A stretch of DNA of 63,833 bases, counting the filler, from Sluysia triapertura (lineage: Eukaryota), in NCBI GenBank assembly GCA_046118255.1. It is 5 parts of 5 records of this genome, joined end to end, with 100 filler letters (N's around TTAATTAATTAA, not from the genome) between each part and the next. Parts side by side here need not be neighbours in the genome. Positions count along the whole stretch, not along the records: positions 51,665 to 63,833 come from JBJNIA010132621.1; 4 more parts are not named here. One strand, 5' to 3'. The first letter of the stretch is position 1. Each line of letters starts with the position of its first letter. The position numbers and the translations under genes are program-made. This document shows, one piece after another, positions 51,665 to 63,833 of the stretch. The notes beneath the pieces are model-generated. The model had not been told where the DNA came from and did no database searches. It saw only the letters and a program-made list of their open reading frames with translations.

Positions 51665-52151
51665 ATATAGACTCTGATTTGTTCAAAACTTATATATAAA
51701 AATATTGGTTTTGTAGCTAAATCCAGAACATAATAGAAAAAATTTTTTGACACAAATTTAATTTGAGATTAATTTGGAAAACGATTTTGTGATTTTAACA
51801 AGATTGTTACATAAAATGTATTGTTACAACACAAAATAATCCATAAAATATAACATAATATAACAGCGTAATATTCAAAAAATGTAATGCTTTGTTGAAA
51901 CAACGTAACATTCAATAAAACATAATGCAATGCTTACCATACGACTGAATGTTATATTAAATGCTTGGAAAATGATGTAAATACAATACTCTCTTAAAAG
52001 TTATGCTTGAATGTTATACCGAATGCCTGAGAATATGAAAATAAAAATAATATAACCGAAAATTTGAAGGTAAATGGTGAGCCACTATTGACTAGAATCA
52101 TCAAAAATACTTTATAATAATTTATAAGTATGTATATCTATTTAATACTGT

Positions 52152-52282
52152 AAACAACTATGATGTAAACAACCAATTGATTTTTCATGCACAAACAACT
52201 ACCATGTAAATAACTAATTGATTTTTCATGACACACAATTATAAATTTTGATTTCAACATGTAAATAATTATTGATTTTTGA
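52152..52282. repeat. About 40-bp tandem repeat, 2 full and 1 partial copy
   Basis: AACAACTAxxATGTAAAxAACxAATTGATTTTTCATG repeated. Confidence 0.8.
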
Positions 52283-55200
52283 TTTATATCATATTTTATT
52301 TTATTTCAATTTTGAATTTTGATTTGGATAAAGTGAGATTTTAATTTAATTTAATTTAATTTAATTTAATCTGATTTAATAATACAATTTAACTCAGCGT
52401 GATTGCTATTATTTTAAATTTAAATTATTTTTCGGTTTGTTTTAGTCTGACCGTAACAATTATCACAAAACACACAAGATAAAAATTTTTTAAATTTTCG
52501 AGCGGAGCAAAATCTTGGTAACAACTTTTGGAATATCTATCGAATTTCATCTGAATTTTTTATTAGCAATCACGTTACAATAAGATCGATATTTTCTAAA
52601 TTTCACAAACAAAATCTAAGTAAATTCAGTTAATTCATTTGGATCATATATTGGATCCTTGGTAAAATATAATTTTAAAATTATTTTATTAGTTCCGTAA
52701 TTTATTATTATTATTACTGATAATTCTTATAAAATTTTGTATAATCTTGATAATAAAGCTTTTTCTTCATAATTACTTATTCAATTAAATTGTATAGTTT
52801 TAAATTCGTTAACATTTAATTTCAAGCTAGAATTTAATTCTAGTAAGTAAAATCTATCACAACGATTTCATATAACGGAATCGACGCAAAATCATTAAAT
52901 AAATTTCACTTTTCATTTATATTTTAAGCATTAAAGTTTTTAAACAATTCTTTTTAAATATTACAATATAAAATTTTCAAGTTAACTTATAGAAAACCTT
53001 AATCCGACCATTATTACTACAATAGACATTAATAAAGTTTACCTCCAGATACGATTAAACATTGGGACTCATCTTAAATTATAAAATCAAACGGCTGGCC
53101 CTAGCTGGTAAGCCCACTACGTTGATGAACTCACTTTAAGCTAAGTTTTATTCTATTTACTTCACTTATGTGAATGCTACTAAATATATATATCTACTTA
53201 ATGAATATTAAGTTCTGACAATAGTAATCGACACAATAATACATGAATAAATCAATCTAAAAAATGTGTATGTATACTAAATTTTGAATAATAATGAAAT
53301 ATAATTTGATTAATTTTTTATTAATTAATTCTTTATTAATTACTGATAAAAATTTATAGCTGTGAATAAAAAACTTGGTGGAATTAAAAGGAATCATATC
53401 AACAAACTTCTGCATAAATATTAATAAATTTAACATAATAGTAAATTATAAATCACATTATTAATTATATAAACATTTTTTGCTGGAATTATATTAATAG
53501 ATTTGTGTATAAATATCAATAACAATCGGAGTTACAACGCAACGAAAGAACTATAGACACATTTAAGTTAAATAATTTGAAGACATTCCCAAACGTTACG
53601 ATTGATTTTGTACCTGGTTGTAAGGTAATTCAAATAATTCCAGCATAAGTCGATAACATCTAAACTAGCTAAATCTCGTTCAATTTTTTTATTTAACTCT
53701 ATATATAAACTAAATTATATTGTAGTTGATGACTTTAATTATTTGTCGGTTTATATACAAGTTTTTATCTTCGATGCTTGAATAAAAATTTTGTTTATTT
53801 TATTTGTTAATTTAACTTATTGAGTAAAAGGGAATTGAGAGATAAAGTCTAGCGAATCAATATCACACTTCCATCTCTAACAACAGAGACGAGTAAAGGA
53901 CTCATAAAATCAATATACTATGTCATAAAGTAAAATTGATCAAGATTGTAGAGGCTAAAATTAGCTTGATTAGTGAGACAGATTAAATACATAACACACA
54001 GACAAGACAAACAGAGTAAATACAAAAAGCCAACGCATATTATTAACATAAAAGTAATTAAAATTTTATAAGATTATTTTAAATTATTAAAGAAACCAAA
54101 ATATCATTTTAATAGCTGTTCTCTTAAACTCTGATTTATGAGGAAATTTTTTAACTTAAAATCCGAAAATCCTAAAATGTTCACTTTGTTTAATTAAAAC
54201 ATATTTTATTCTATTAATTTTTTGTACAAAATATTAATTTCAATTGTTCAATTTTTGTAATGCATTCATACTTAATATTTTGATATAAATTAAACTTACA
54301 TAATAAATTAAAGGAACAGATTAAGTCTTTAGTGCTATTAAGTGCCTCAAAGAAACAGCGCAGGGTCTGAAATTAATTAAGAAATGCACTTAATTTGAAA
54401 GATAAATAAATGAAAACACAAATGCAGAAAACAATTAGAGTGGAGGAAACTATGCAGCATTAAAAAAATGATTTTAATGAAACAGAAACCAATACATAAA
54501 TACGCATGATAAAAATAGAAATAAGGCCAAACCAACTAACATATGGAAATTTCCTATATTATTATGAGCTTTTATTAAAATCATTTATATAATTTTAATT
54601 ATAAAATAAACCAGTGATGTGATAAAAATAAACTATAGAGAAAATTTAACTACAGGAAAAAAGTATGACATTTAAATCGAAGTTTTCCAATGATATCCGA
54701 ACAAAATACAACTTGTATGTGAAAATTGAATTTATTATTTGTGGTTATTCGGTTAGAACAAGCCATTTTGGACACTAATGTATTCATTAATTTGACTATA
54801 TTTATAACACAATTTATTATTGTAATATTTGATTAAAGTAACTGAAATTTTCACAATTTTTAAAATTTTCAAAACATAAAATTAGGAGTTCTTACACTTA
54901 TACTTAATGAATTTTATTTTATCTCAGTATAGAAAGATCTAAATTAAGTGCAAAAAATATTTTCACTCAATCATTAAATTAAAACAAACTATTTAATTCA
55001 TTTCCAAAAGTTATCATCTAAGTTATAGTAATATTAAAAAGTGAAACGTAAAATAAATTATAAAAGAAATAAAAAACATCTATATTTATAATTTTTAAAC
55101 ATTATTGCAGTATTATAAACTTTAACAAATGATGGGTAATCTTTATTTCAAGTAAATGCGGTTAACGATCCATATCTATAATGCAGTGGTGGGGATGGAG

Positions 55201-57688
55201 GCGCAAACTCTGTAATCCCGAATGACTAATCAAACACTTAATTAAATTTAATTTTAATTAAAACTTTTATTGATTAGAATCAAATGTACTATTAAATTTC
55301 CAATATTTATTTTCAATAGAATAAAAATTCTAATAATAATTTGACAATAACAGTATCAAAAATTGATTTGTGTTCATATCAGCAACTGCTACATTCTAAC
55401 TTTTTATTTTCACATTTTAAATTATTCATATTTACCGATTCTTTGCCATTGATCATAATTCAAAAAATATAAAATATAATATTAAAACTATAATAATAAT
55501 TATGTAATAATAATGGAAGTTGAAACAATAATGACACTATTAGTATAGGTTATAATAATTTTATGTACAAAAACCTAACTTCGAAAATGACTTGAAACTT
55601 AAGACTTTCTGCTTGATTTATGTATGCTAAGATTACAACTTGAATTTAAAATAATTATTTTCTAACACTTGTAATAATAACTGGAGGTTACTGTTCGCTC
55701 GTCTCTGATGGAAGAAATGGAAGTACAATATTATGTGATTTTAGGATTTGAGTTCTCTTCCTCTTGTCTAGCTAGTAACTAAAACGAACTAGTTTAAAAT
55801 CTTTATTCACACTAATCAAAATGTACTAAAATGTTTATTCGTATTGTCTCAACTGAATAATAATAGAACAGATGATTGTAAAACTAACTAAAAAATTTAA
55901 AATATTCACAAACACTGGGGATAAAATGATTTTAAGATGTCAAACGCAGATCAATGTTAACGAATATAACAAGAATAAAATCCAAAAAGATTTAATGTTA
56001 AATAAAATGTTTTTAAAATAACTACAAATACTACACATAATTTAAATGTTCTTTAACTTTGGAGAATTTTAACAACGTTATAATTATTCAAATATTATCT
56101 CAATAATAAATATGTTAAAATCAAAATTTTTACAAAGAAAATAATCAAATTATACCTTACAGAGTCTTAATATTGTCTAATAACTTTATCTCTATGCCAA
56201 ATGTCAAATGTATTTCATGATCTTCTTCACAACCAAATTTTGATGTATCAGATGTTTCTTCACAATCTTCACGATCGAATTAATGTATCTTCTTCTTCAT
56301 TCACAATCGAATAAATAATACCAAATATTAATGTACATTCGCAATCGATCGTTTCTTTATATACTCTTTAAAGTAATAATTTCTGTCTTTTTTGTAATAA
56401 AATAATAAACCCTATATTATTCATTCTTTTTTCTCTACTCTAATTTATTTATTACATATTTATTATTATTTTTTATTACATACTTTAATTATTATTTTTC
56501 TCATAAAATAAACTCTATTAATATTTTGCGTATCTATTATTATTCGTTTTTTAACTATTTACTATATGTTAATTTGAATAAAATAATAACGATAACAATA
56601 GGCTTTTGTTATTATTTTTTACTATTACAATAGGTACTAATGCATTCTGCTATTACGGTCTCTTAGGACCATTGTGATATTTTGATATTGTGATATTGCA
56701 TTAAATATTTATTCGGTTATTCTTTGTAATATTTTGTACAACGTAATTTTGTTTTATAATTTGATTTTCAATTTTGATTTTTTTAATTTAATTTTGTATA
56801 TTTAATTTTAATTTTAAAATTTACATATTTTAACGAAACATAAATTTAACAAATATTAACTTAACATTTAAAATAGACAAAAATAATAATTCAATATTTT
56901 ACAAATGATAAAAACATTATTAAAAAATTCATAAAACGAATAAAGGTTAATTTAAAACATTGTTTGAATTACATTTGATAAAACATTAAATCTAAAAAAA
57001 GATAAAACCAAAAAGGCTAAATATTTTAAGTTTTCCTTATGAATATGTTTGTTTCAACGAAGAATTCGTTTTTTCATTTTAGAACTAGATTGTACTCCGT
57101 TCTATTACATCATATTCTATTCTTAAATAGTTCATACTTCTTAACACAATCAAAATCGAAATCACAATCTAATAGTAAATTAGTAATAGAAACAAAATAT
57201 AATTAAAATGAAATAATTTAGAATATTGAACGTAGGTTCAAATATAAATGGGCATCTTCTACAAATGATAGTGACAAGATTTTTGCAAAGAAATTTATGG
57301 TAAATATTTGGACGAATCTTAATGAAAAAGAAATGGTTAAGAATTAGAACTCATTAACTACTTTTTTTTCAATTAAATGATAAAAATGTTATATATTATA
57401 TAAATAGAAACGGTATTTTTTCCCTGGAAGAAAATGATATAGTAGCTGTTTATTTATTATTATTTTATAAGTTTAGCTGGAATTGGATAAATAAAATTTG
57501 TTTTTGGTATTTCCAAATAATAATAATAATAAGTATTTCATTCATAAAAATTAAGGCATCATTTTAATTTTATTTTTTTGTAATAATAAATTATACAAAA
57601 AACAATAGTTCAGCTACGATATTGTTACCGTTTATTTTAAAGTTAATTTTTATATAGAACATTAAAAATTTATAAATATCAATCTAAC

Positions 57689-59443
57689 CAAAGCAAAAAC
57701 TCGTTCTCTGATATTCGTATTAGTAACTAGTTGTGTAAGGTTATGCGCAACTAAATTCAATCAATTATGTAGAAAATCAAAATTCAGTTACCTAATAATA
57801 AATCAACACCATCTAATAAATCTGCTTCAACTAATTCTCGCGCAAGTACATCTACTGAATCTAAATAAAAATAAAAATACAATGAAATTAAAATTGACAA
57901 ACGATAAAATTTAAATAAATCACGTTTGTGTCACTATTCGACATCCGTCAACTTGGATAAGTTTATTCCGGTAAAATTCAAATATCTATCTCACATAAAA
58001 TTTTCATTAATGTATATTAAGATGATATAACAGTGATTTTTTCTAATTGCAATATATTCTGATACTGAACAATAGCTTCATCGGTTTTAGGCTTATTTAT
58101 TTTTGTTTTCATATTTACTTTGTTTCAATTGAAGAAATTTTTGAATTTTTAAGAGATTTAAAAGTATTCATAATTTAATTTAGTAATGCACACATTTAAT
58201 TATAACTGAGTTTTTGACTTGAGAATAATCTTGTTTATAAATATAAATGAAATTTACTAAATCTTAAATACACATCATGTGTAATCAGTGTTAAAATTGG
58301 CTATTCTAAGTGTAAACAAAAGTTGAGGTATCTATATTCAGGAACTATCTGATAGATTAACTAATTAAAATAAGATAAATATAATACGAAATGATACATA
58401 TGTAATTACGATGATAATAACTAAGTTAGTTATTCTTATATTAGTGAATTAACTATTTTTATAAGAAAGATGAATTTAGTTAAATGTTTATATTTTATAT
58501 AATTTGGTTAACTAGAAAATTGAGTAAGAGTATCAATTTTACTTAAGGATATATCATTAATCTTAAATTCAGTTGCTGATTTTGTTCTCACAAATTAGGA
58601 TCAACGTCAAAATGTCAGTGATAGAATTAAAACCATATGTAATTCAATTAAATTTTCTTGATATTATTCTTGAATATATTTAGTCTTCTTAGACTATTAT
58701 TATCAATTAATTTTTTAAGCTTCATTTTATAATTATTTTTTCCTTATTTTATTCATTTTATAATTATTTTATTCTTCATATGACCAATTTAATCTATATA
58801 TATTATTTAATTTTTCCTGTATTGTTATTTACATATATTTATTTTCTAGTTATTTGATTGCTATTCTTCATTTCCATTTTAATAAAATTATGCTTGTTCT
58901 TACTTCTGACGCTACCGTTTGGTTCGTACTTTTTGACTTGCTAACTAATTATGTTGTATTCAGATATATGTTTGTTGCGATCCACTTTTAATTTCCTTCA
59001 TAATTTTATTGATTTTAAGACATTTAAAATGTTTATTTTGAGGTTAATAAGATATTTTTTGTATTAATTTTATTTTGAGATTACTTCGATGTTTCGATAT
59101 TTTGATTTTATTGTAATTTAATCTCATACATAAATTAAATCGAACCTTTACCAACTACAAAATTAAAACTAATATCTTGTAATTCATAATTTTGTTTCGG
59201 ATTTCGTTTTCTTAATGTTATTCTGTAAAATGTGTTTGATTCTGGCGTTTTTGATTGTTGTTCTTTTTTAACGTTATTAGGTACTTTAGTTTCTTTACTA
59301 ACGACATTTTTTAAATTAAAATTCCATTTATCAATGAATTCCTTAGTAACTCCAATATCATTCTTTTCGTCTTTAGATTTTCTAGTTGGGCAAGGAGGGC
59401 AACTGGCAGTTAAAAGAACTTTTGTTAATAAATCTCGATCCTT
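57689..59443 (-). CDS. OSR1/SPAK (OXSR1/STK39/fray) kinase 3' part with CCT/PF2 domain; exons about 59443-59146, 57860-57792, 57750-57689
   Basis: Spliced translation RITLRKRNPKQNYELQDISFNFVVGK-DSVDVLARELVEADLLDGVDLLL-VAHNLTQLV...RVFAL matches LRLRNxxxELNDIRFEFxxGxDTxxxVxxELxxAxLVDGxDLxxVAxNL. GT-AG introns in phase. Kinase domain and last exon not found. Confidence 0.88.
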
Positions 59444-61197
59444 GATCACCTGAGACAAGCCAGCGTCTATCACGACTAGCTGCTGTGCACGTTATATTAG
59501 TAGTGTGTCCATGTAAAATTAAAGAATCATTGTAATAGTAATCATATATGATTAATAAATGAGAACAAGCATAAAATATGCGACATGTATCTTCCTGAGA
59601 CAAATTTATGATTGGTACATACCGATTGAAACCCAAACAAAACACTGGAGTTAAAGAGGATACTGTTGGTTTATTTTCTGGTAATATGTTACTAGATAAC
59701 CGTTTTAATTCTGTAAATTAGTTAAAATATATAAAAAAATTTACGTTATTTTTAAATATTGAATGTCAATTTTTGCATAGTAAAATTGAGGCCCGGATTA
59801 AGATAGGAATTTTTTATTAGTTTACCAATCTTTTATAATTGAGCTTCCATTAAAACCAATTTGTACTATAATTTATTTATGAAATTTGGTTTCTTAAAAA
59901 TAAGTCTGTTGTAAAAAGAAATCCGTTACCTGGAAGAAATTTATTTAGCTATTGATGCTACAAATTCGTTTGTCAATCTAAAGCTACTTTTCGATCGTAC
60001 GTTACGACTTTATTGCTTTTTCATGATCGGTTCCCCAAGCGCATAGCAAGTCAGAACACATTTTAATCTAATTTTATGTGTCCACAAAACACACATTCTA
60101 AAAATACATATTTATTCTTTATTTATATTTATTTATGTTTATTTATTTATTCTTTATATATGTTCGAACATAATTATTAGATTTAAACTCAATAAATAAA
60201 TATTAAAATTAAAATCAAAACCGTAACCTTTAATTTCTTTGTAGTATCGTTCTTTTTTTGAAAGTCTTCTTAAACTTTTCTTCGAATTATTAAATTGGTT
60301 TACATTGTTATTACCTTTGTTGCTAATATCATTTAAATCACCATCTTCAAATTCCGATTCTTCAAATTTAGAACTTTCATCATTATTTTTATCACTTTTT
60401 ACACTATTTTGAGATTTATTTCTAAACTCTTTATCTGAATTTATTTCAAAATTATCTGTTTGTTTTGTATCACTAATTTTACTTTCTAATAGTTCTTGTG
60501 ATTCTACATTACTATCTGCTTCTAACTTATTTGTATTAATTTCTGTTTTATTTTCTTGTGATTCGGTATTTTCTTGTGTTTCTAATTGATTTGTTTCTAA
60601 TATATCTGTTTCTTCTGCTTTAATTTCTTGTGACTCCATATTGACATCTGTCTCTAATTGATTTCTGTTGCTTTCTTCGTAATCTTCAATATTTTCACTG
60701 ATATCCATTGTTTCTTCTTTCAATTCATTTACTTTTTGTGCATCAATAGTCTCAGAATAATTTATTTCTTCTTCCCTTTTTTCATATTCGTCAAATTGTT
60801 TATTATGTAAATTAACATCCTCACTAGTTATCATTGTTCCGTCTGTAACTTCAGAATCATCAATCAATCCTTCTTTTGCTTCAGTTTTATCATCATTATC
60901 ATTCATTTGGATTTCTTCTCTAGATGTTTCGCTTGTTTCACCTTCAGCATTTTGTGACTGTTCACTTATTTCACCTTGTTGACTTATTTCATCTTGAATT
61001 TTGCTTACATTTGTAATTGTGTGCTCTCCATAATCAATAGAATCGTTTGTTTTTGTATTTTCATTATCTAAAAAGTATATAATAAGTTCTATATCATACC
61101 GAGTTTTTTCAAGGATTCTTCTAAATCTTTATCTAATAATAAATTCTTAGACTATGTATATAAAAATACCTTCTTTAGAGGATTCTTGTTCATCCAT
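59382..61197 (-). CDS. CFAP251: CFAP251/WDR66 5' part (acidic N-terminus plus first WD40), truncated; exons 61197-61170, 61132-61100, 61067-60228, 59710-59382
   Basis: ATG, introns of 37 and 32 nt, long Glu-rich exon, then SLTPVFCLGFNRYVPIINL...IFYACSHLLIIYDY...LHGHTTNITCTAASRDRRWLVSGDQG. Similarity ends abruptly at about 59440. Confidence 0.82.
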
Positions 61198-61675
61198 AAA
61201 TGTTTAATTGAATACTTTGAAATTAATTAACAATTAGTAACTAAGAATGTCAATTATAAAAACAAAATGTAATTATAAATAGATTTCTAACATTCACCTT
61301 ACTTTTAATGAAGGAACAATCTTAACAATTTAAATTTTATATTATAAATTGATTTATAATTATGCTAATTTAATTTTAAATTGATCAACAGTATTTATAT
61401 ATTCTTGATAATATCACAATCGATATGATAAAAGAACGTATCAGTAAAATGTATTAATATTTCAGGAAGAACATTTTCATGATGATCATTTTATGTTTGA
61501 GTTCAAACAAAAATGTAATACTGTTGTTAAAACAACCATCAGTTAGCAGAAAACAAATCGGTTAAATATATCTAAGTTAAAAGTAATGTCACTTGTATTG
61601 AAATAATATCCGTCAATATCAAGGGAATTTTTGTAATAAAAAGTCCTTTTTTAATTTACTTACCGTATGTCGTAC

Positions 61676-61810
61676 TGTGGTGCTTCAACCCTGACCTATG
61701 ATTATATTGTAACATTTACCTATACACTGACACACACCCAAACCTCAATTCATTTGAAAATACACCTAAAGAACATCAATATTTAGGACTTTCTTAAGTC
61801 TTTCACTTTT
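61676..61810 (-). mobile_element. Reverse-oriented solo-LTR-like end
   Basis: TGTGGTGCTTCAACC (reverse complement GGTTGAAGCACCACA) followed by a C/A-rich tract. Confidence 0.45.
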
Positions 61811-62409
61811 GTTTACAAAAGTCAACCTTTTAAAATAATATTAATTAAAGTTAAAATTTTAATTATAAGCAGTAATAATATCTATTTCTAATTTTTTACG
61901 AACATTATAACGATGTCTGTCAGCATATTGTCGTTGTTATTGCAAGTCTCACTGTCATTGTCTTGTTTTATTATTTTTTTGTTTTTTTGTTCTATTTTAA
62001 TAGTTGTATGTACTCTAAAGTGTGATTTTTTAACTGCATAATCGGAGGAAGTATTAAAAAACATAAGCTTTTGCAGTAAAAGAATGTGCAATTAGAAACG
62101 GTTCAATGAACATGAACAGATTATTGCATACGTGACCCAGAACATATTCACTCAATTTGTAATTAAAGATGCCATTCTATGCCACATAGCTAAAATGCCA
62201 GACATAAGAAATGTTATTAATGACATTAAAGAAACCGATAATTTAAGAATATATCCGCATTAAAACAAAAAAACAAGAATTATTGAAGCCAGTCAAATAG
62301 ATGGAAGAAGAAATAGAATTGGGAAAAATAAAATGAGTTAGTGTTGGGATGAAAAGGCCTAAGGTGCTATTTTGTAAAATTGACTATAATAAAATAAAAT
62401 TGTTAGACG

Positions 62410-62482
62410 GGGCTGATAGCTCAGTTGTAGAGGAATCGAACTGTGCAGCGAGAGGTTCCGGGTTCGATCCCCGGTCAGCCCA
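62410..62482 (+). tRNA. tRNA-like gene or pseudogene with disrupted anticodon arm (Ala/Pro-like body, isotype undetermined)
   Basis: Perfect acceptor stem GGGCTGA/TCAGCCC + A, T arm CCGGG-TTCGATC-CCCGG, A box TAGCTCAGTTG, TTTT terminator. D stem has a mismatch; anticodon stem has 3 pairs and an 8-nt loop ACTGTGCA. Confidence 0.75.
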
Positions 62483-62548
62483 TTTTATGAAGTCTAACAT
62501 TAGAACGAGAATAACATTTTCAAAGGATCATAATATCGTTTAGAAGTA

Positions 62549-63595
62549 TTAAATTACTGATAAAGTAGTCCTAAACGTTGCTTCGAAAGGTCCTCCGATT
62601 ATTTCAAGCTTGATAAATCGACTTCTTATATTCAATTTCCAATCTACATCTAGAGCTTGAAATAATTTATCAAGTACTACAGGAAGTGCAGAAAGTATGT
62701 AAAATTTGTATAAAACTATTCGATTAAGAAACAAAAATTAGTGTTACAATAATGTTTCGTCTTTAATGTTATCTGATCAATTCACTTAATAGATCTCAAT
62801 GAATTCAATAATCACAAAATCAATTATCCAAAATTTTCTTATTTTAACAATGACATTTATTAAACCCAATAGTATGTTTTGTTGAGGTGTAATTATTTTA
62901 TTTTAATTATGAAGTATAAATGATTTCATGTATATTTGAATTTAAAATAATTAATTTTATTATTGTTGTGGTTTAATGTTGGTTGAAGAGTATTGTTAAA
63001 AACTTAATTTATTATCAATATTTAAATTGAAATTATCAAAACATTTATAAATTTAACAAGATTATTACATTTAAATATTGTTGACATATAAACAATAAAA
63101 ACAAAAAAGAAACTATCTAAAGATCTATTTAAAATATTATTAATTATTTTAATTCTAGTCCTCCTTCCTGATAAAAGCCATGGTTCGCTATCTAAATAAA
63201 AATCAGAAGTTAATACAACGTTTATAAAAGAATAAAAATTGTTTACTTCGATTCTATCTTCTTCAATCAATAAAGGTCCATCACTTTAAAACGATGATCA
63301 ACATTCAGGTTCCTTAGGTCACCGAAAATAGTTTCTCTGATTATGTTAAGAGCTAATATATTTATATCGATGTTGGACTCACTCTCTTTTAAGCGCATGC
63401 TGGATGGAAATGGTATACCCAAACTGAAAGCACGTACGGTGGCACTAGTATCAGACTGACGCATTAGTGATTTTGTGGATCCATGAATGGATTGACACGT
63501 ATTCTAGATAACTAATTTAGTTTGTTATTGTAGATCTGGTTTTACAAGGTATACTGACTCAATGATATTTTCTTGCTGAAGTGTGGAGGGCCTAA
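62549..63595 (-). CDS. Unknown multi-exon gene (fragmentary, possibly disrupted)
   Basis: Exon-like blocks SIHGSTKSLMRQSDTSATVRAFSLGIPFP..., DSEPWLLSGRRTR and ALPVVLDKLFQALDVDWKLNIRSRF..., separated by short AT-rich intron-like spacers. Confidence 0.45.
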
Positions 63596-63833
63596 CAATT
63601 TTTATCTTAAAAAATTTCGTTTTTATTTTATTTTTTAATCTACTGAAAATTATTTTTAACAAACAACAATTTATTAAGCTCATTTTTAAATTAACAAACA
63701 AGGGCTTAAGGCCCGAAACAATTGAAAACCAAGATATAATTAAATTTAATTGAACAACAAAACTTGTTAATAATATATATAATATATAATAAATATAACA
63801 AATATTTAATAAATATAAATGATAGAATATAAA

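What the first reader, a model, noticed from the sequence alone, without database searches (positions are those of the whole stretch)
57689..61197. Chimeric locus: CFAP251/WDR66 5' half fused mid-exon to an OSR1/SPAK kinase 3' half
Seen: four clean exons encode an acidic N-terminus and the first WD40 of WDR66, up to RRWLVSGDQG. At AAGGATC (plus-strand 59437-59443) the sequence switches without an intron to KDRDLLTKVLL in the +1 frame. That frame continues through three clean exons encoding an OSR1/SPAK CCT domain. Both halves lack stops and keep their splice sites, unlike the decayed pseudogenes nearby. As written, the transcript gives a 409-aa truncated protein; a +1 shift would give an acidic-WD40-CCT fusion with no kinase domain. 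Known: CCT domains bind RFxV motifs of WNK kinases and cation-chloride cotransporters. Inference: a recent microhomology-mediated deletion or rearrangement, a young chimeric gene, or a library/assembly chimera (two GATC sites sit at the junction).
Basis: partly seen in the sequence, partly recalled or inferred. Interest (0 to 1): 0.75.

Follow-up and report, generated by a model that had tools for sequence, protein, structure and literature searches.

The report
Out-of-frame CFAP251–OSR1 gene-fragment chimera
In an AT-rich flatworm genome the start of a cilia gene (CFAP251) is joined, one base out of frame, to an internal piece of an OSR1/SPAK kinase gene; the joint is real DNA, but it most likely marks a young chimeric pseudogene, not a working fusion protein.

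Summary
On the minus strand, six GT..AG exons give an acidic N-terminus and the first WD blade of CFAP251 (human CFAP251 245-321, E 1.5e-11). Inside exon 4, at 59443-59437, this changes by +1 frame into the post-kinase linker and CCT domain of a flatworm OSR1/SPAK kinase. The as-written product is 409 aa.

New points:
- The OSR1 part starts exactly at a phase-0 exon start (K|DRELL) that is conserved in tapeworms and flukes.
- It lacks two further ancestral introns but keeps three downstream ones.
- It has no kinase domain, no ATG in its frame, and not the conserved last CCT exon. It is therefore an internal gene fragment.
- Contigs from two public runs, from two studies and two organism labels, carry the junction. 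A library or assembly chimera is unlikely.
- One run also holds intron-less copies and a diverged copy, so this is a small family.

Best reading: a real, young chimeric pseudogene or gene-fragment mosaic, joined at exon level. Expression, the parent genes and the long-range linkage could not be tested. This is an ordinary kind of event with a neat junction; interest is modest.

The parts
61170..61197 (-). Exon 1 with ATG (61197), start of the acidic N-terminus
   Evidence: ATGGATGAACAA..., donor GTATTT at 61169
61100..61132 (-). Exon 2 (33 nt)
   Evidence: acceptor TTATTAG, donor GTATGA; keeps the frame open
60228..61067 (-). Exon 3 (840 nt): acidic, E/Q/N-rich low-complexity N-terminal region with internal 60-72-nt repeats. 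No homologues were found.
   Evidence: X1 contig contiguous with intron 3 at depth 22.8
59441..59710 (-). Exon 4, first part: start of the CFAP251/WDR66 beta-propeller (first WD blade), ending ...RRWLVSGDQG
   Evidence: human CFAP251 245-321 E 1.5e-11 and four other CFAP251 chains; WD40 E 3.3e-4 (below cut-off)
59437..59443 (-). Junction AAGGATC. CFAP251 homology ends here and OSR1 homology begins, with a +1 frame offset and no intron.
   Evidence: crossed by contigs of runs X1 (59146-59469) and X2 (59285-59478)
59382..59384 (-). TAG stop of the CFAP251 frame, giving the 409-aa product. It lies upstream of two splice junctions.
59146..59440 (-). Exon 4, second part: OSR1/SPAK post-kinase linker (DRDLLTKVLL..., KWNF motif) and the first CCT strands (FYRITLRKRNPKQNYELQDISFNFVVGK). 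It begins at the conserved exon start and lacks two ancestral introns.
57861..59145 (-). Intron (1285 nt) at the conserved GK|D position. It contains multi-copy AT-rich repeats around 58714-59061.
   Evidence: X1 contig 57833-59175 with 0 differences at depth 12.5, and intron-less joint 57860->59146 at depth 65.6
57792..57860 (-). Exon 5: CCT middle part, (D)SVDVLARELVEADLLDGVDLLL
   Evidence: OSR1_C E 0.0088; up to 91% identity to fluke OSR1
57689..57750 (-). Exon 6: VAHNLTQLVTNTNIRERVFAL, with donor GTTAGA at 57688. The conserved last CCT exon that should follow is not found in the 6 kb downstream.
   Evidence: intron-less joint 57750->57792 at depth 91.7 in X1

Best explanation
This is a real DNA junction in a flatworm genome. 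A 5' fragment of a CFAP251/WDR66 gene is joined inside one exon, one base out of frame, to an internal fragment of an OSR1/SPAK (STK39-type) kinase gene.

The CFAP251 fragment carries the ATG, three short introns, the acidic N-terminus and the first WD blade. The OSR1 fragment starts exactly at the conserved phase-0 exon start that follows the kinase domain (K|DRELL). It has lost the next two ancestral introns, keeps the three downstream intron positions, and stops before the conserved last CCT exon.

The locus can therefore encode only a 409-aa truncated CFAP251 N-terminus with a 19-residue frameshift tail. Its stop lies upstream of two splice junctions. The CCT frame has no ATG and lacks about a quarter of the domain.

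Shown:
- the anatomy of the locus;
- the identity of both halves;
- the coincidence of the junction with a conserved exon start;
- the presence of the junction in two independent read sets;
- the existence of intron-less copies.

Inferred:
- The joint was made at exon level. One route is intronic breakpoints giving a hybrid intron that was later removed, together with its two neighbours, by a cDNA-mediated or microhomology-mediated intron-loss event. The other is the joining of partly spliced RNA copies.
- The phases do not match (phase 1 into phase 0), so the result is a young chimeric pseudogene.
- That pseudogene has since been copied, and some copies are processed.
For: - Gene model, frames and the 409-aa stop.
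- CFAP251 identity, with homology ending at the junction.
- OSR1 identity. All flatworm OSR1 proteins align from 59443, at their K309/310-DRELL.
- A phase-0 intron exactly between AAG(K) and GAY CGN (DR) in H. diminuta, Fasciola hepatica and Schistosoma mekongi. In S. mekongi the exon begins GATCGA, as it does here.
- The two next introns are conserved in those species and in L002 but absent here. The GK|D, LL|VAH and F(P/A)L| introns are conserved here.
- No kinase-domain match anywhere in 51665-63833.
- The conserved last exon is absent. That exon is part of the solved CCT fold.
- Reads:
  - X1 has a 324-nt contig covering 59146-59469 with 1 difference and no indel. Its k-mers span the junction.
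  - X2, from another study and organism label, has a 194-nt contig covering 59285-59478 with 4 differences. It bridges the junction by 35 nt.
  - X1 contigs are identical to the window over introns and flanks (57833-59175, 59666-60814, 61209-62000).
  - X1 shows intron-less joints 57860->59146 and 57750->57792, and a diverged intron-less CCT copy at depth 12.2.
- Open frames are far beyond chance.
Against: - Long-range linkage of the junction to the intron-bearing flanks rests on the assembly alone. The contigs laid are short k=31 contigs with forks at 59695, 59534/59505 and 59469.
- The kind of run X1 (DNA or RNA) is not on record. The intron-less joints could therefore be transcripts rather than processed DNA copies.
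- No flatworm CFAP251 gene could be fetched, so it is untested whether the CFAP251 side also ends at an exon boundary.
- The parent genes were not seen directly.
- The piece ends 4.4 kb upstream and 7.8 kb downstream of the junction. Kinase exons or the last CCT exon could lie outside it.
- Open frames on both sides are compatible with youth but also with selection.
Confidence: 0.55

Rival explanations
1. The junction is real but belongs to processed (intron-less) chimeric copies. The window is then an assembly mosaic threaded from the true CFAP251 locus, through a processed copy, into an intron-bearing OSR1-like locus.
For::
- The X1 majority contigs over exon 4 differ from the window at 5 sites (59356, 59604, 59622, 59631, 59647) and have 3-6 times the depth of the flanking introns.
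- Forks with 30-nt overlaps lie at 59695, 59534/59505 and 59469.
- The fork node 59469-59440 ends exactly at the junction, as expected if another copy shares the WD side and continues differently.
Against: - The X1 contig 59146-59469 has no fork between intron 4 and the junction, so the intron-bearing copy carries the junction.
- The window has private variants on both sides of the junction, as a separate copy would.
- A long-read assembly would not be confused by repeats of 100-550 nt, although the assembly technology is unknown.
Confidence: 0.12
2. Two intact genes are interleaved on one strand. The OSR1 kinase exons lie upstream of the piece and splice onto the AG|GATCGA acceptor at 59441|59440. 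CFAP251 exon 4 ends at a donor such as CAG|GTGATC (59451|59450) and continues downstream of the OSR1 exons.
For: - An AG dinucleotide stands exactly in front of the conserved exon start, as in S. mekongi (aag|GATCGA).
- A G|GT donor-like site lies 10 nt upstream.
- Both frames are open.
Against: - There is no kinase exon in 4.4 kb upstream, where CFAP251's own ATG and exons 1-3 lie.
- The conserved last OSR1 exon is absent from 6 kb downstream, although introns here measure 32-1285 nt.
- No WD-like exon or GC bump with a WD reading lies downstream.
- CFAP251 homology (GDQG against human ADKG) runs on past the putative donor.
- The two neighbouring ancestral introns are missing.
Confidence: 0.08
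3. This is a functional young chimeric gene and the CCT part is expressed. Possible routes are spliced-leader trans-splicing onto the retained acceptor (flatworm leaders end in AUG, giving M-DRDLL... in frame), alternative splicing from the phase-1 end of the WD exon to phase-1 exon 5, or +1 frameshifting.
For: - The OSR1 frame is open for 143 codons (P about 2e-6).
- The acceptor is in phase 0.
- All reported parasitic-flatworm spliced leaders end in ATG and can supply a start codon (PMC12582326).
- Intron-less joints in X1 could be transcripts.
Against: - The last part of the CCT fold is missing.
- The X1 contig runs unbranched across the acceptor.
- Divergence among copies is only 1-2%, so an open frame needs no selection.
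- Of the variant sites, 5 of 8 change the amino acid.
- No RNA run is on record.
Confidence: 0.07
4. The junction itself is a library, amplification or assembly artefact, for example ligation at GATC.
For: Two GATC sites flank the joint. X1 may be the sample that the assembly was made from.
Against: - The junction is present in contigs of two runs from two studies and organism labels. The X2 copy carries 4 differences of its own.
- There is no GATCGATC fill-in signature.
- The OSR1 side starts at a conserved exon start whose natural sequence in S. mekongi is also GATCGA.
Confidence: 0.03

Closest known systems
CFAP251 / WDR66 (radial-spoke-3 base protein of motile axonemes; PDB 8J07, 9D2F, 9E5C, 8GLV chains)
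   Same: A non-conserved acidic N-terminus is followed by the start of the WD beta-propeller. About 77 residues align to human residues 245-321.
   Different: Only the first blade is present. The rest of the roughly 1000-aa protein is absent from the locus, and the frame ends 19 codons after the junction.
OSR1/SPAK (OXSR1, STK39; Drosophila Fray) and their CCT domain (PF12202; PDB 2V3S, 7OKW, 7O86)
   Same: The post-kinase linker and the first three quarters or so of the CCT domain are present. CCT exons are 60-91% identical to flatworm OSR1, and three intron positions are conserved.
   Different: There is no kinase domain and no last CCT exon. Two ancestral introns are missing. The frame has no start codon and is fused out of frame behind a CFAP251 exon.
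Sdic of Drosophila melanogaster (chimera of AnnX and the dynein intermediate chain gene Cdic, amplified into a tandem family; PMC3502208, PMC10589255) and jingwei (retroposed Adh fused to yande; from my own knowledge)
   Same: It is a young lineage-specific chimera built from parts of two unrelated genes. One is an axoneme/sperm gene supplying the 5' end and presumably the promoter. The chimera is present in several copies.
   Different: Sdic and jingwei have intact reading frames and shown expression and function. Here the frames are offset, both domains are truncated, and expression is untested.
Intron loss by cDNA recombination or by microhomology-mediated repair (PMC3698931), and semi-processed retrocopies
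   Same: Adjacent ancestral introns are missing precisely while others are retained. A short AAGG-type identity sits at the joint. Fully intron-less copies exist in the reads.
   Different: One of the 'lost introns' would have been a hybrid intron between two different genes. That was not observed directly.

Membership tests
CFAP251/WDR66 | Sequence homology to the CFAP251 propeller | tested here: met
   five CFAP251/FAP251 chains at E 1.5e-11 to 2.8e-7, over query residues 18-95 only
CFAP251/WDR66 | Complete WD40 propeller body downstream of the first blade | tested here: not met
   Homology ends at 59441. No WD-like ORF or Pfam hit was found elsewhere in the piece. This is a weak test because no flatworm CFAP251 reference could be fetched.
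OSR1/SPAK (STK39-type) kinases | N-terminal Ser/Thr kinase domain | tested here: not met
   tblastn of more than 30 flatworm OSR1 proteins: no kinase-domain match in 51665-63833
OSR1/SPAK (STK39-type) kinases | Complete CCT domain (Pfam OSR1_C, PF12202) | tested here: not met
   Exon-wise Pfam hits fall below the cut-off (E 0.09 and 0.0088). tblastn covers P0001 residues 454-536. The conserved last exon (NSPPAPGQVPVESELHGYAK...) is absent, and it is part of the solved fold.
OSR1/SPAK (STK39-type) kinases | Conserved flatworm gene structure (intron positions) | tested here: inconclusive
   Three downstream intron positions are conserved, two ancestral introns are absent, and the fragment starts at the K|DR intron position
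Young chimeric genes (Sdic/jingwei type) | Junction of two unrelated genes present in genomic DNA, seen independently of the assembly | tested here: met
   contigs of X1 and X2 (two studies, two organism labels) cross 59437-59443
Young chimeric genes (Sdic/jingwei type) | One reading frame across the junction | tested here: not met
   +1 offset, stop at 59384-59382. Neither run shows an indel at the junction.
Young chimeric genes (Sdic/jingwei type) | Transcription of the chimera | not testable with these tools
   No run on record as RNA. Intron-less joints in X1 are ambiguous between RNA and processed DNA copies.
Young chimeric genes (Sdic/jingwei type) | Intact parent genes elsewhere in the genome | tested here: inconclusive
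   An X1 fork node at 59469-59440 suggests a copy that continues differently after ...CAAGG. A diverged CCT copy sits at depth 12.2. The genome itself could not be searched.

The most novel reading that the evidence does not exclude
The retained phase-0 acceptor AG|GATCGA at 59441|59440 serves as an internal spliced-leader acceptor. The flatworm leader's terminal AUG then yields a kinase-less M-DRDLL...CCT-like protein. Alternatively, a WD-exon to exon-5 splice gives an in-frame acidic-WD-CCT protein. Driven by a cilia/sperm promoter, such a protein could act as a decoy for RFxV motifs of WNK kinases and cation-chloride cotransporters.
Probability: 0.04. Interest if true: 0.6.

Novelty: new member of a known kind. 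Interest (0 to 1): 0.3.

Why it matters
If the reading is right, this is a clean, datable example in flatworms of how gene fragments are joined at exon boundaries and then copied. It is a chimera whose joint coincides with an ancestral intron position, with neighbouring introns lost and processed copies present. That bears on the roles of cDNA-mediated intron loss and retroposition in flatworm genome evolution.

For annotation, it warns against calling a CFAP251 or an OSR1 gene here. It does not open a new biological question unless the CCT part proves to be expressed.

Tried and rejected
- The word search with the acidic exon 3 ORF and with the WD ORF found nothing in the allowed length ranges. 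This says nothing about full-length relatives. No flatworm CFAP251 reference could be obtained, so the CFAP251-side exon boundary and any downstream CFAP251 exons could not be tested properly.
- The PDB search with the OSR1 ORF of exon 4 and with exon 5 found nothing useful. Identity came from the representative search and from tblastn.
- The protein atlas gave only generic WD40 clusters.
- Pfam on ten other ORFs of the piece found nothing. A six-frame reading of GC-richer bumps showed no WD or OSR1 exon.
- No internal duplicate of either half lies in the piece.
- The exact 27-nt junction word is absent from the JGI metagenome contigs.
- H. diminuta has no CFAP251 within 10 kb of OSR1. Cichlidogyrus OSR1 has an NYD-SP28 gene beside it, not CFAP251. 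Neighbourhood of the two parents is therefore not supported.
- I considered a candidate last exon (57613 onward, LNYCFLYNL...). I rejected it because it does not match the strongly conserved GQVPVESELHGYAK motif.
Exons were searched one by one by reference. Joined translations were made only inside local scripts, to count codons and stops.
Full report
**What is there**

The piece 51665-63833 is very AT-rich, with 18-33% G+C in 500-nt windows. The exons are 61197-61170, 61132-61100, 61067-60228, 59710-59146, 57860-57792 and 57750-57689. All are bounded by GT..AG. The introns measure 37, 32, 517, 1285 and 41 nt, at 16-24% G+C against 27-36% in the exons.

Exons 1-3 total 901 nt, so exon 4 is entered in phase 1. 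The frame reads (E)LKRLSSNILPENKPTVSSLTPVF...RDRRWLVSGDQG, then 19 unrelated residues, then TAG at 59384-59382.

One base further on, the frame reads KDRDLLTKVLLTASCPPCPTRK...FYRITLRKRNPKQNYELQDISFNFVVGK. It continues through the next two exons as DSVDVLARELVEADLLDGVDLLL and VAHNLTQLVTNTNIRERVFAL. The heptamer AAGGATC is at 59443-59437, and two GATC sites lie at 59447-59444 and 59440-59437.

Both open frames are far beyond chance for this composition: P about 2.6e-17 and 1.8e-6. Stop-free runs in the non-coding part of the piece average 10.7 codons.

**Identity of the halves**

The WD ORF matches solved CFAP251 chains. The human match covers residues 245-321 at E 1.5e-11, and there are four further CFAP251/FAP251 chains. 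The alignment ends at the junction.

The acidic exon has no detectable relatives. That fits the unconserved N-termini of this family, but it is not evidence either way.

For the second half, exon-wise Pfam hits to OSR1_C are weak (E 0.09 and 0.0088). The exhaustive representative search gave a 566-aa protein with Pkinase and OSR1_C domains, named STE20/SPS1 proline-alanine-rich kinase of Hymenolepis microstoma.

A panel of more than 30 flatworm OSR1/SPAK proteins was laid on the piece by tblastn. Every one of them starts its match at 59443, at its own K309/310-DRELL directly behind the kinase domain. They continue over 59263-59141, 57861-57793 and 57760-57689, with up to 91% identity in the CCT exons. 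Flukes and tapeworms score about equally. The organism is therefore a flatworm, and I cannot place it more closely.

No kinase-domain match exists anywhere in the piece.

1. *The OSR1 part begins exactly at a conserved exon start.* In Hymenolepis diminuta the upstream exon ends ...GCC AAG|gtgagt and the next begins ag|GAC CGT GAA. Fasciola hepatica and Schistosoma mekongi have the same phase-0 intron. In S. mekongi the exon even begins aag|GATCGA, as here.
2. *Two ancestral introns are missing.* They lie after KRD(P)K and before PxxYR(I/L)TL. They are present in those three species, and the second is also present in the Logan contig L002. Both are absent from the window's exon 4.
3. *Three intron positions are kept.* The GK|D, LL|VAH and F(A/P)L| positions are conserved here.
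4. *The last exon is missing.* The strongly conserved last exon (NSPPAPGQVPVESELHGYAK(V/I)LIR) has no counterpart in the 6 kb downstream or anywhere else in the piece. That exon corresponds to the last part of the solved human OSR1 CCT fold.
5. *There is no start codon.* The OSR1 frame contains no ATG.

The OSR1-derived part is thus an internal, partly intron-less gene fragment. It is not a '3' half'.

A CFAP251 exon ending in phase 1 (CAA G) joined to a phase-0 exon start (GAT CGA) gives exactly the observed +1 offset.

**Is the junction real?**

Only two public runs hold the stretch, both as k=31 contigs. X1 holds 91% of the sampled words. X2 holds 6% and has another organism label and study.

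- In X1, a 324-nt contig covers 59146-59469 with one difference and no indel. It reaches 26-29 nt beyond the joint. That is short of the tool's 31-nt rule for bridging, but every 31-mer across the joint is in it.
- In X2, a 194-nt contig covers 59285-59478 with four differences, so it bridges the joint by 35 nt. A 258-nt contig continues over 59479-59716.
- The frameshift is therefore not a sequencing error, and the junction is not peculiar to this assembly or to one library.
- X1 contigs are identical to the window over intron 4 (57833-59175), intron 3 plus exon 3 (59666-60814) and the upstream flank (61209-62000), at depths of 12-23.

**A small family**

The following observations are also.

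- Over exon 4 the X1 contigs have depth 62-78. They differ from the window at 59356, 59604, 59622, 59631 and 59647, and X2 shares all five states.
- X1 also has joints that remove exactly the introns: 57860->59146 (depth 65.6, two contigs) and 57750->57792 (depth 91.7). Further intron-less variants sit at depths 14.6 and 12.2. The last of these has seven differences in 59180-59203.
- No spliced exon 3-exon 4 form is seen. One contig runs unbranched from intron 3 into exon 3.
- Contig ends with 30-nt overlaps mark forks at 59695, 59534/59505, 59469 and 59146. The fork node 59469-59440 ends exactly at the joint, as expected if another copy shares the WD side up to ...CAAGG and then continues differently. 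That copy could be a parental CFAP251.
- No fork lies between the joint and intron 4. The intron-bearing copy therefore carries the joint.

The variant types are mixed and not editing-like, and five of eight change the amino acid.

I read this as several genomic copies of the same junction, some of them processed. The library type of X1 is not on record, though, and a transcript origin of the intron-less joints cannot be excluded.

**Most likely explanation (confidence about 0.55)**

This is a real, young chimeric gene-fragment mosaic joined at exon level. It encodes at most a truncated CFAP251 N-terminus. Its stop lies upstream of two splice junctions, so the transcript would be an NMD candidate by general knowledge.

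How it arose is inference. The breakpoint coinciding with an ancestral intron position, together with the loss of the two adjacent introns, points to an RNA/cDNA step. One route is a hybrid intron, formed by intronic breakpoints, that was later removed with its neighbours by recombination with a spliced cDNA. Microhomology-mediated repair between AAG|G-type ends is another way to lose an intron (PMC3698931). A further route is a copy made from partly spliced RNA. The intron-less copies in X1 fit such activity.

**Rivals**

- *Assembly mosaic threaded through a processed copy (0.12).* The junction would be real but the flanks mis-joined.
- *Interleaved intact genes using the AG at 59442-59441 as OSR1 acceptor (0.08).* Against this: no kinase exon in 4.4 kb upstream, no last exon in 6 kb downstream, and the missing introns.
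- *A functional chimera (0.07).* Flatworm spliced leaders end in AUG (PMC12582326). Trans-splicing onto the phase-0 acceptor would read M-DRDLL... in frame. A splice from the phase-1 WD exon end to phase-1 exon 5 would also be in frame. However, the CCT fold is incomplete and nothing shows such RNAs.
- *A library or assembly artefact of the joint itself (0.03).*

**Comparison with known cases**

Each half is a fragment of a well-known family: CFAP251 at the base of radial spoke 3, and OSR1/SPAK with its RFxV-binding CCT domain. The locus fails the defining features of both. It has no propeller body, no kinase domain and an incomplete CCT.

As an event it resembles young chimeric genes such as Sdic (PMC3502208, PMC10589255) and jingwei (from my own knowledge). 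Unlike them, it has no common reading frame and no shown expression.

**Limits**

- The genome itself could not be searched for the parents.
- Only the one read-laying run returned contigs, not reads.
- No flatworm CFAP251 gene could be fetched.
Exons were searched singly by reference, and joined translations were used only in local scripts to count codons and stops.

**Verdict**

The thing is an ordinary kind of object, a chimeric pseudogene or gene-fragment family, with an unusually tidy exon-boundary junction. Interest 0.3.

Noticed in passing
window 62410-62482 (+): Rfam finds a full-length tRNA match (41.7 bits, E 3.6e-6), while ARAGORN reports none. It lies in a GC-richer block, 62005-62704. 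It may be a tRNA pseudogene or a tRNA-derived repeat.
   Followed up: no
window 60493-60666 (exon 3): The acidic exon contains three diverged 60-72-nt direct repeats, 74-81% alike. They correspond to repeated ...ESQE...LE(T/A)... units in the protein.
   Followed up: no
window 58714-59061 and 61672-62000: Summed contig depth in X1 is 150-200 here, with many short joints and loose ends. These look like multi-copy AT-rich repeats inside intron 4 and upstream of the gene.
   Followed up: no
window 59180-59203 and 57738-57811 (X1 contig, depth 12.2): A diverged, intron-less copy of the CCT-coding exons exists in run X1, with 7 differences in 24 nt; one of the changed codons becomes Val, the residue P0003 has at that position. 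It may be the bona fide OSR1 or another paralogue.
   Followed up: partly
window 63175-63634 and 52985-53204, 55085-55284, 55605-55824, 59885-60124: These are GC-richer bumps (30-44% G+C) with no recognisable coding reading and no Pfam hit. Their nature is unknown.
   Followed up: partly
L003 (Cichlidogyrus casuarinus contig): The monogenean OSR1 gene is intron-poor. Residues 1-448 align (94% identity) to one uninterrupted stretch of L003, 1001-2416, so the K|DR intron is lost there. A divergent NYD-SP28 (sperm-tail) gene lies beside it.
   Followed up: no
L002 (Logan contig of SRR29362725): A 40% G+C flatworm-like contig carries the OSR1 CCT exons with the same three intron positions. Its organism was not identified.
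   Followed up: no
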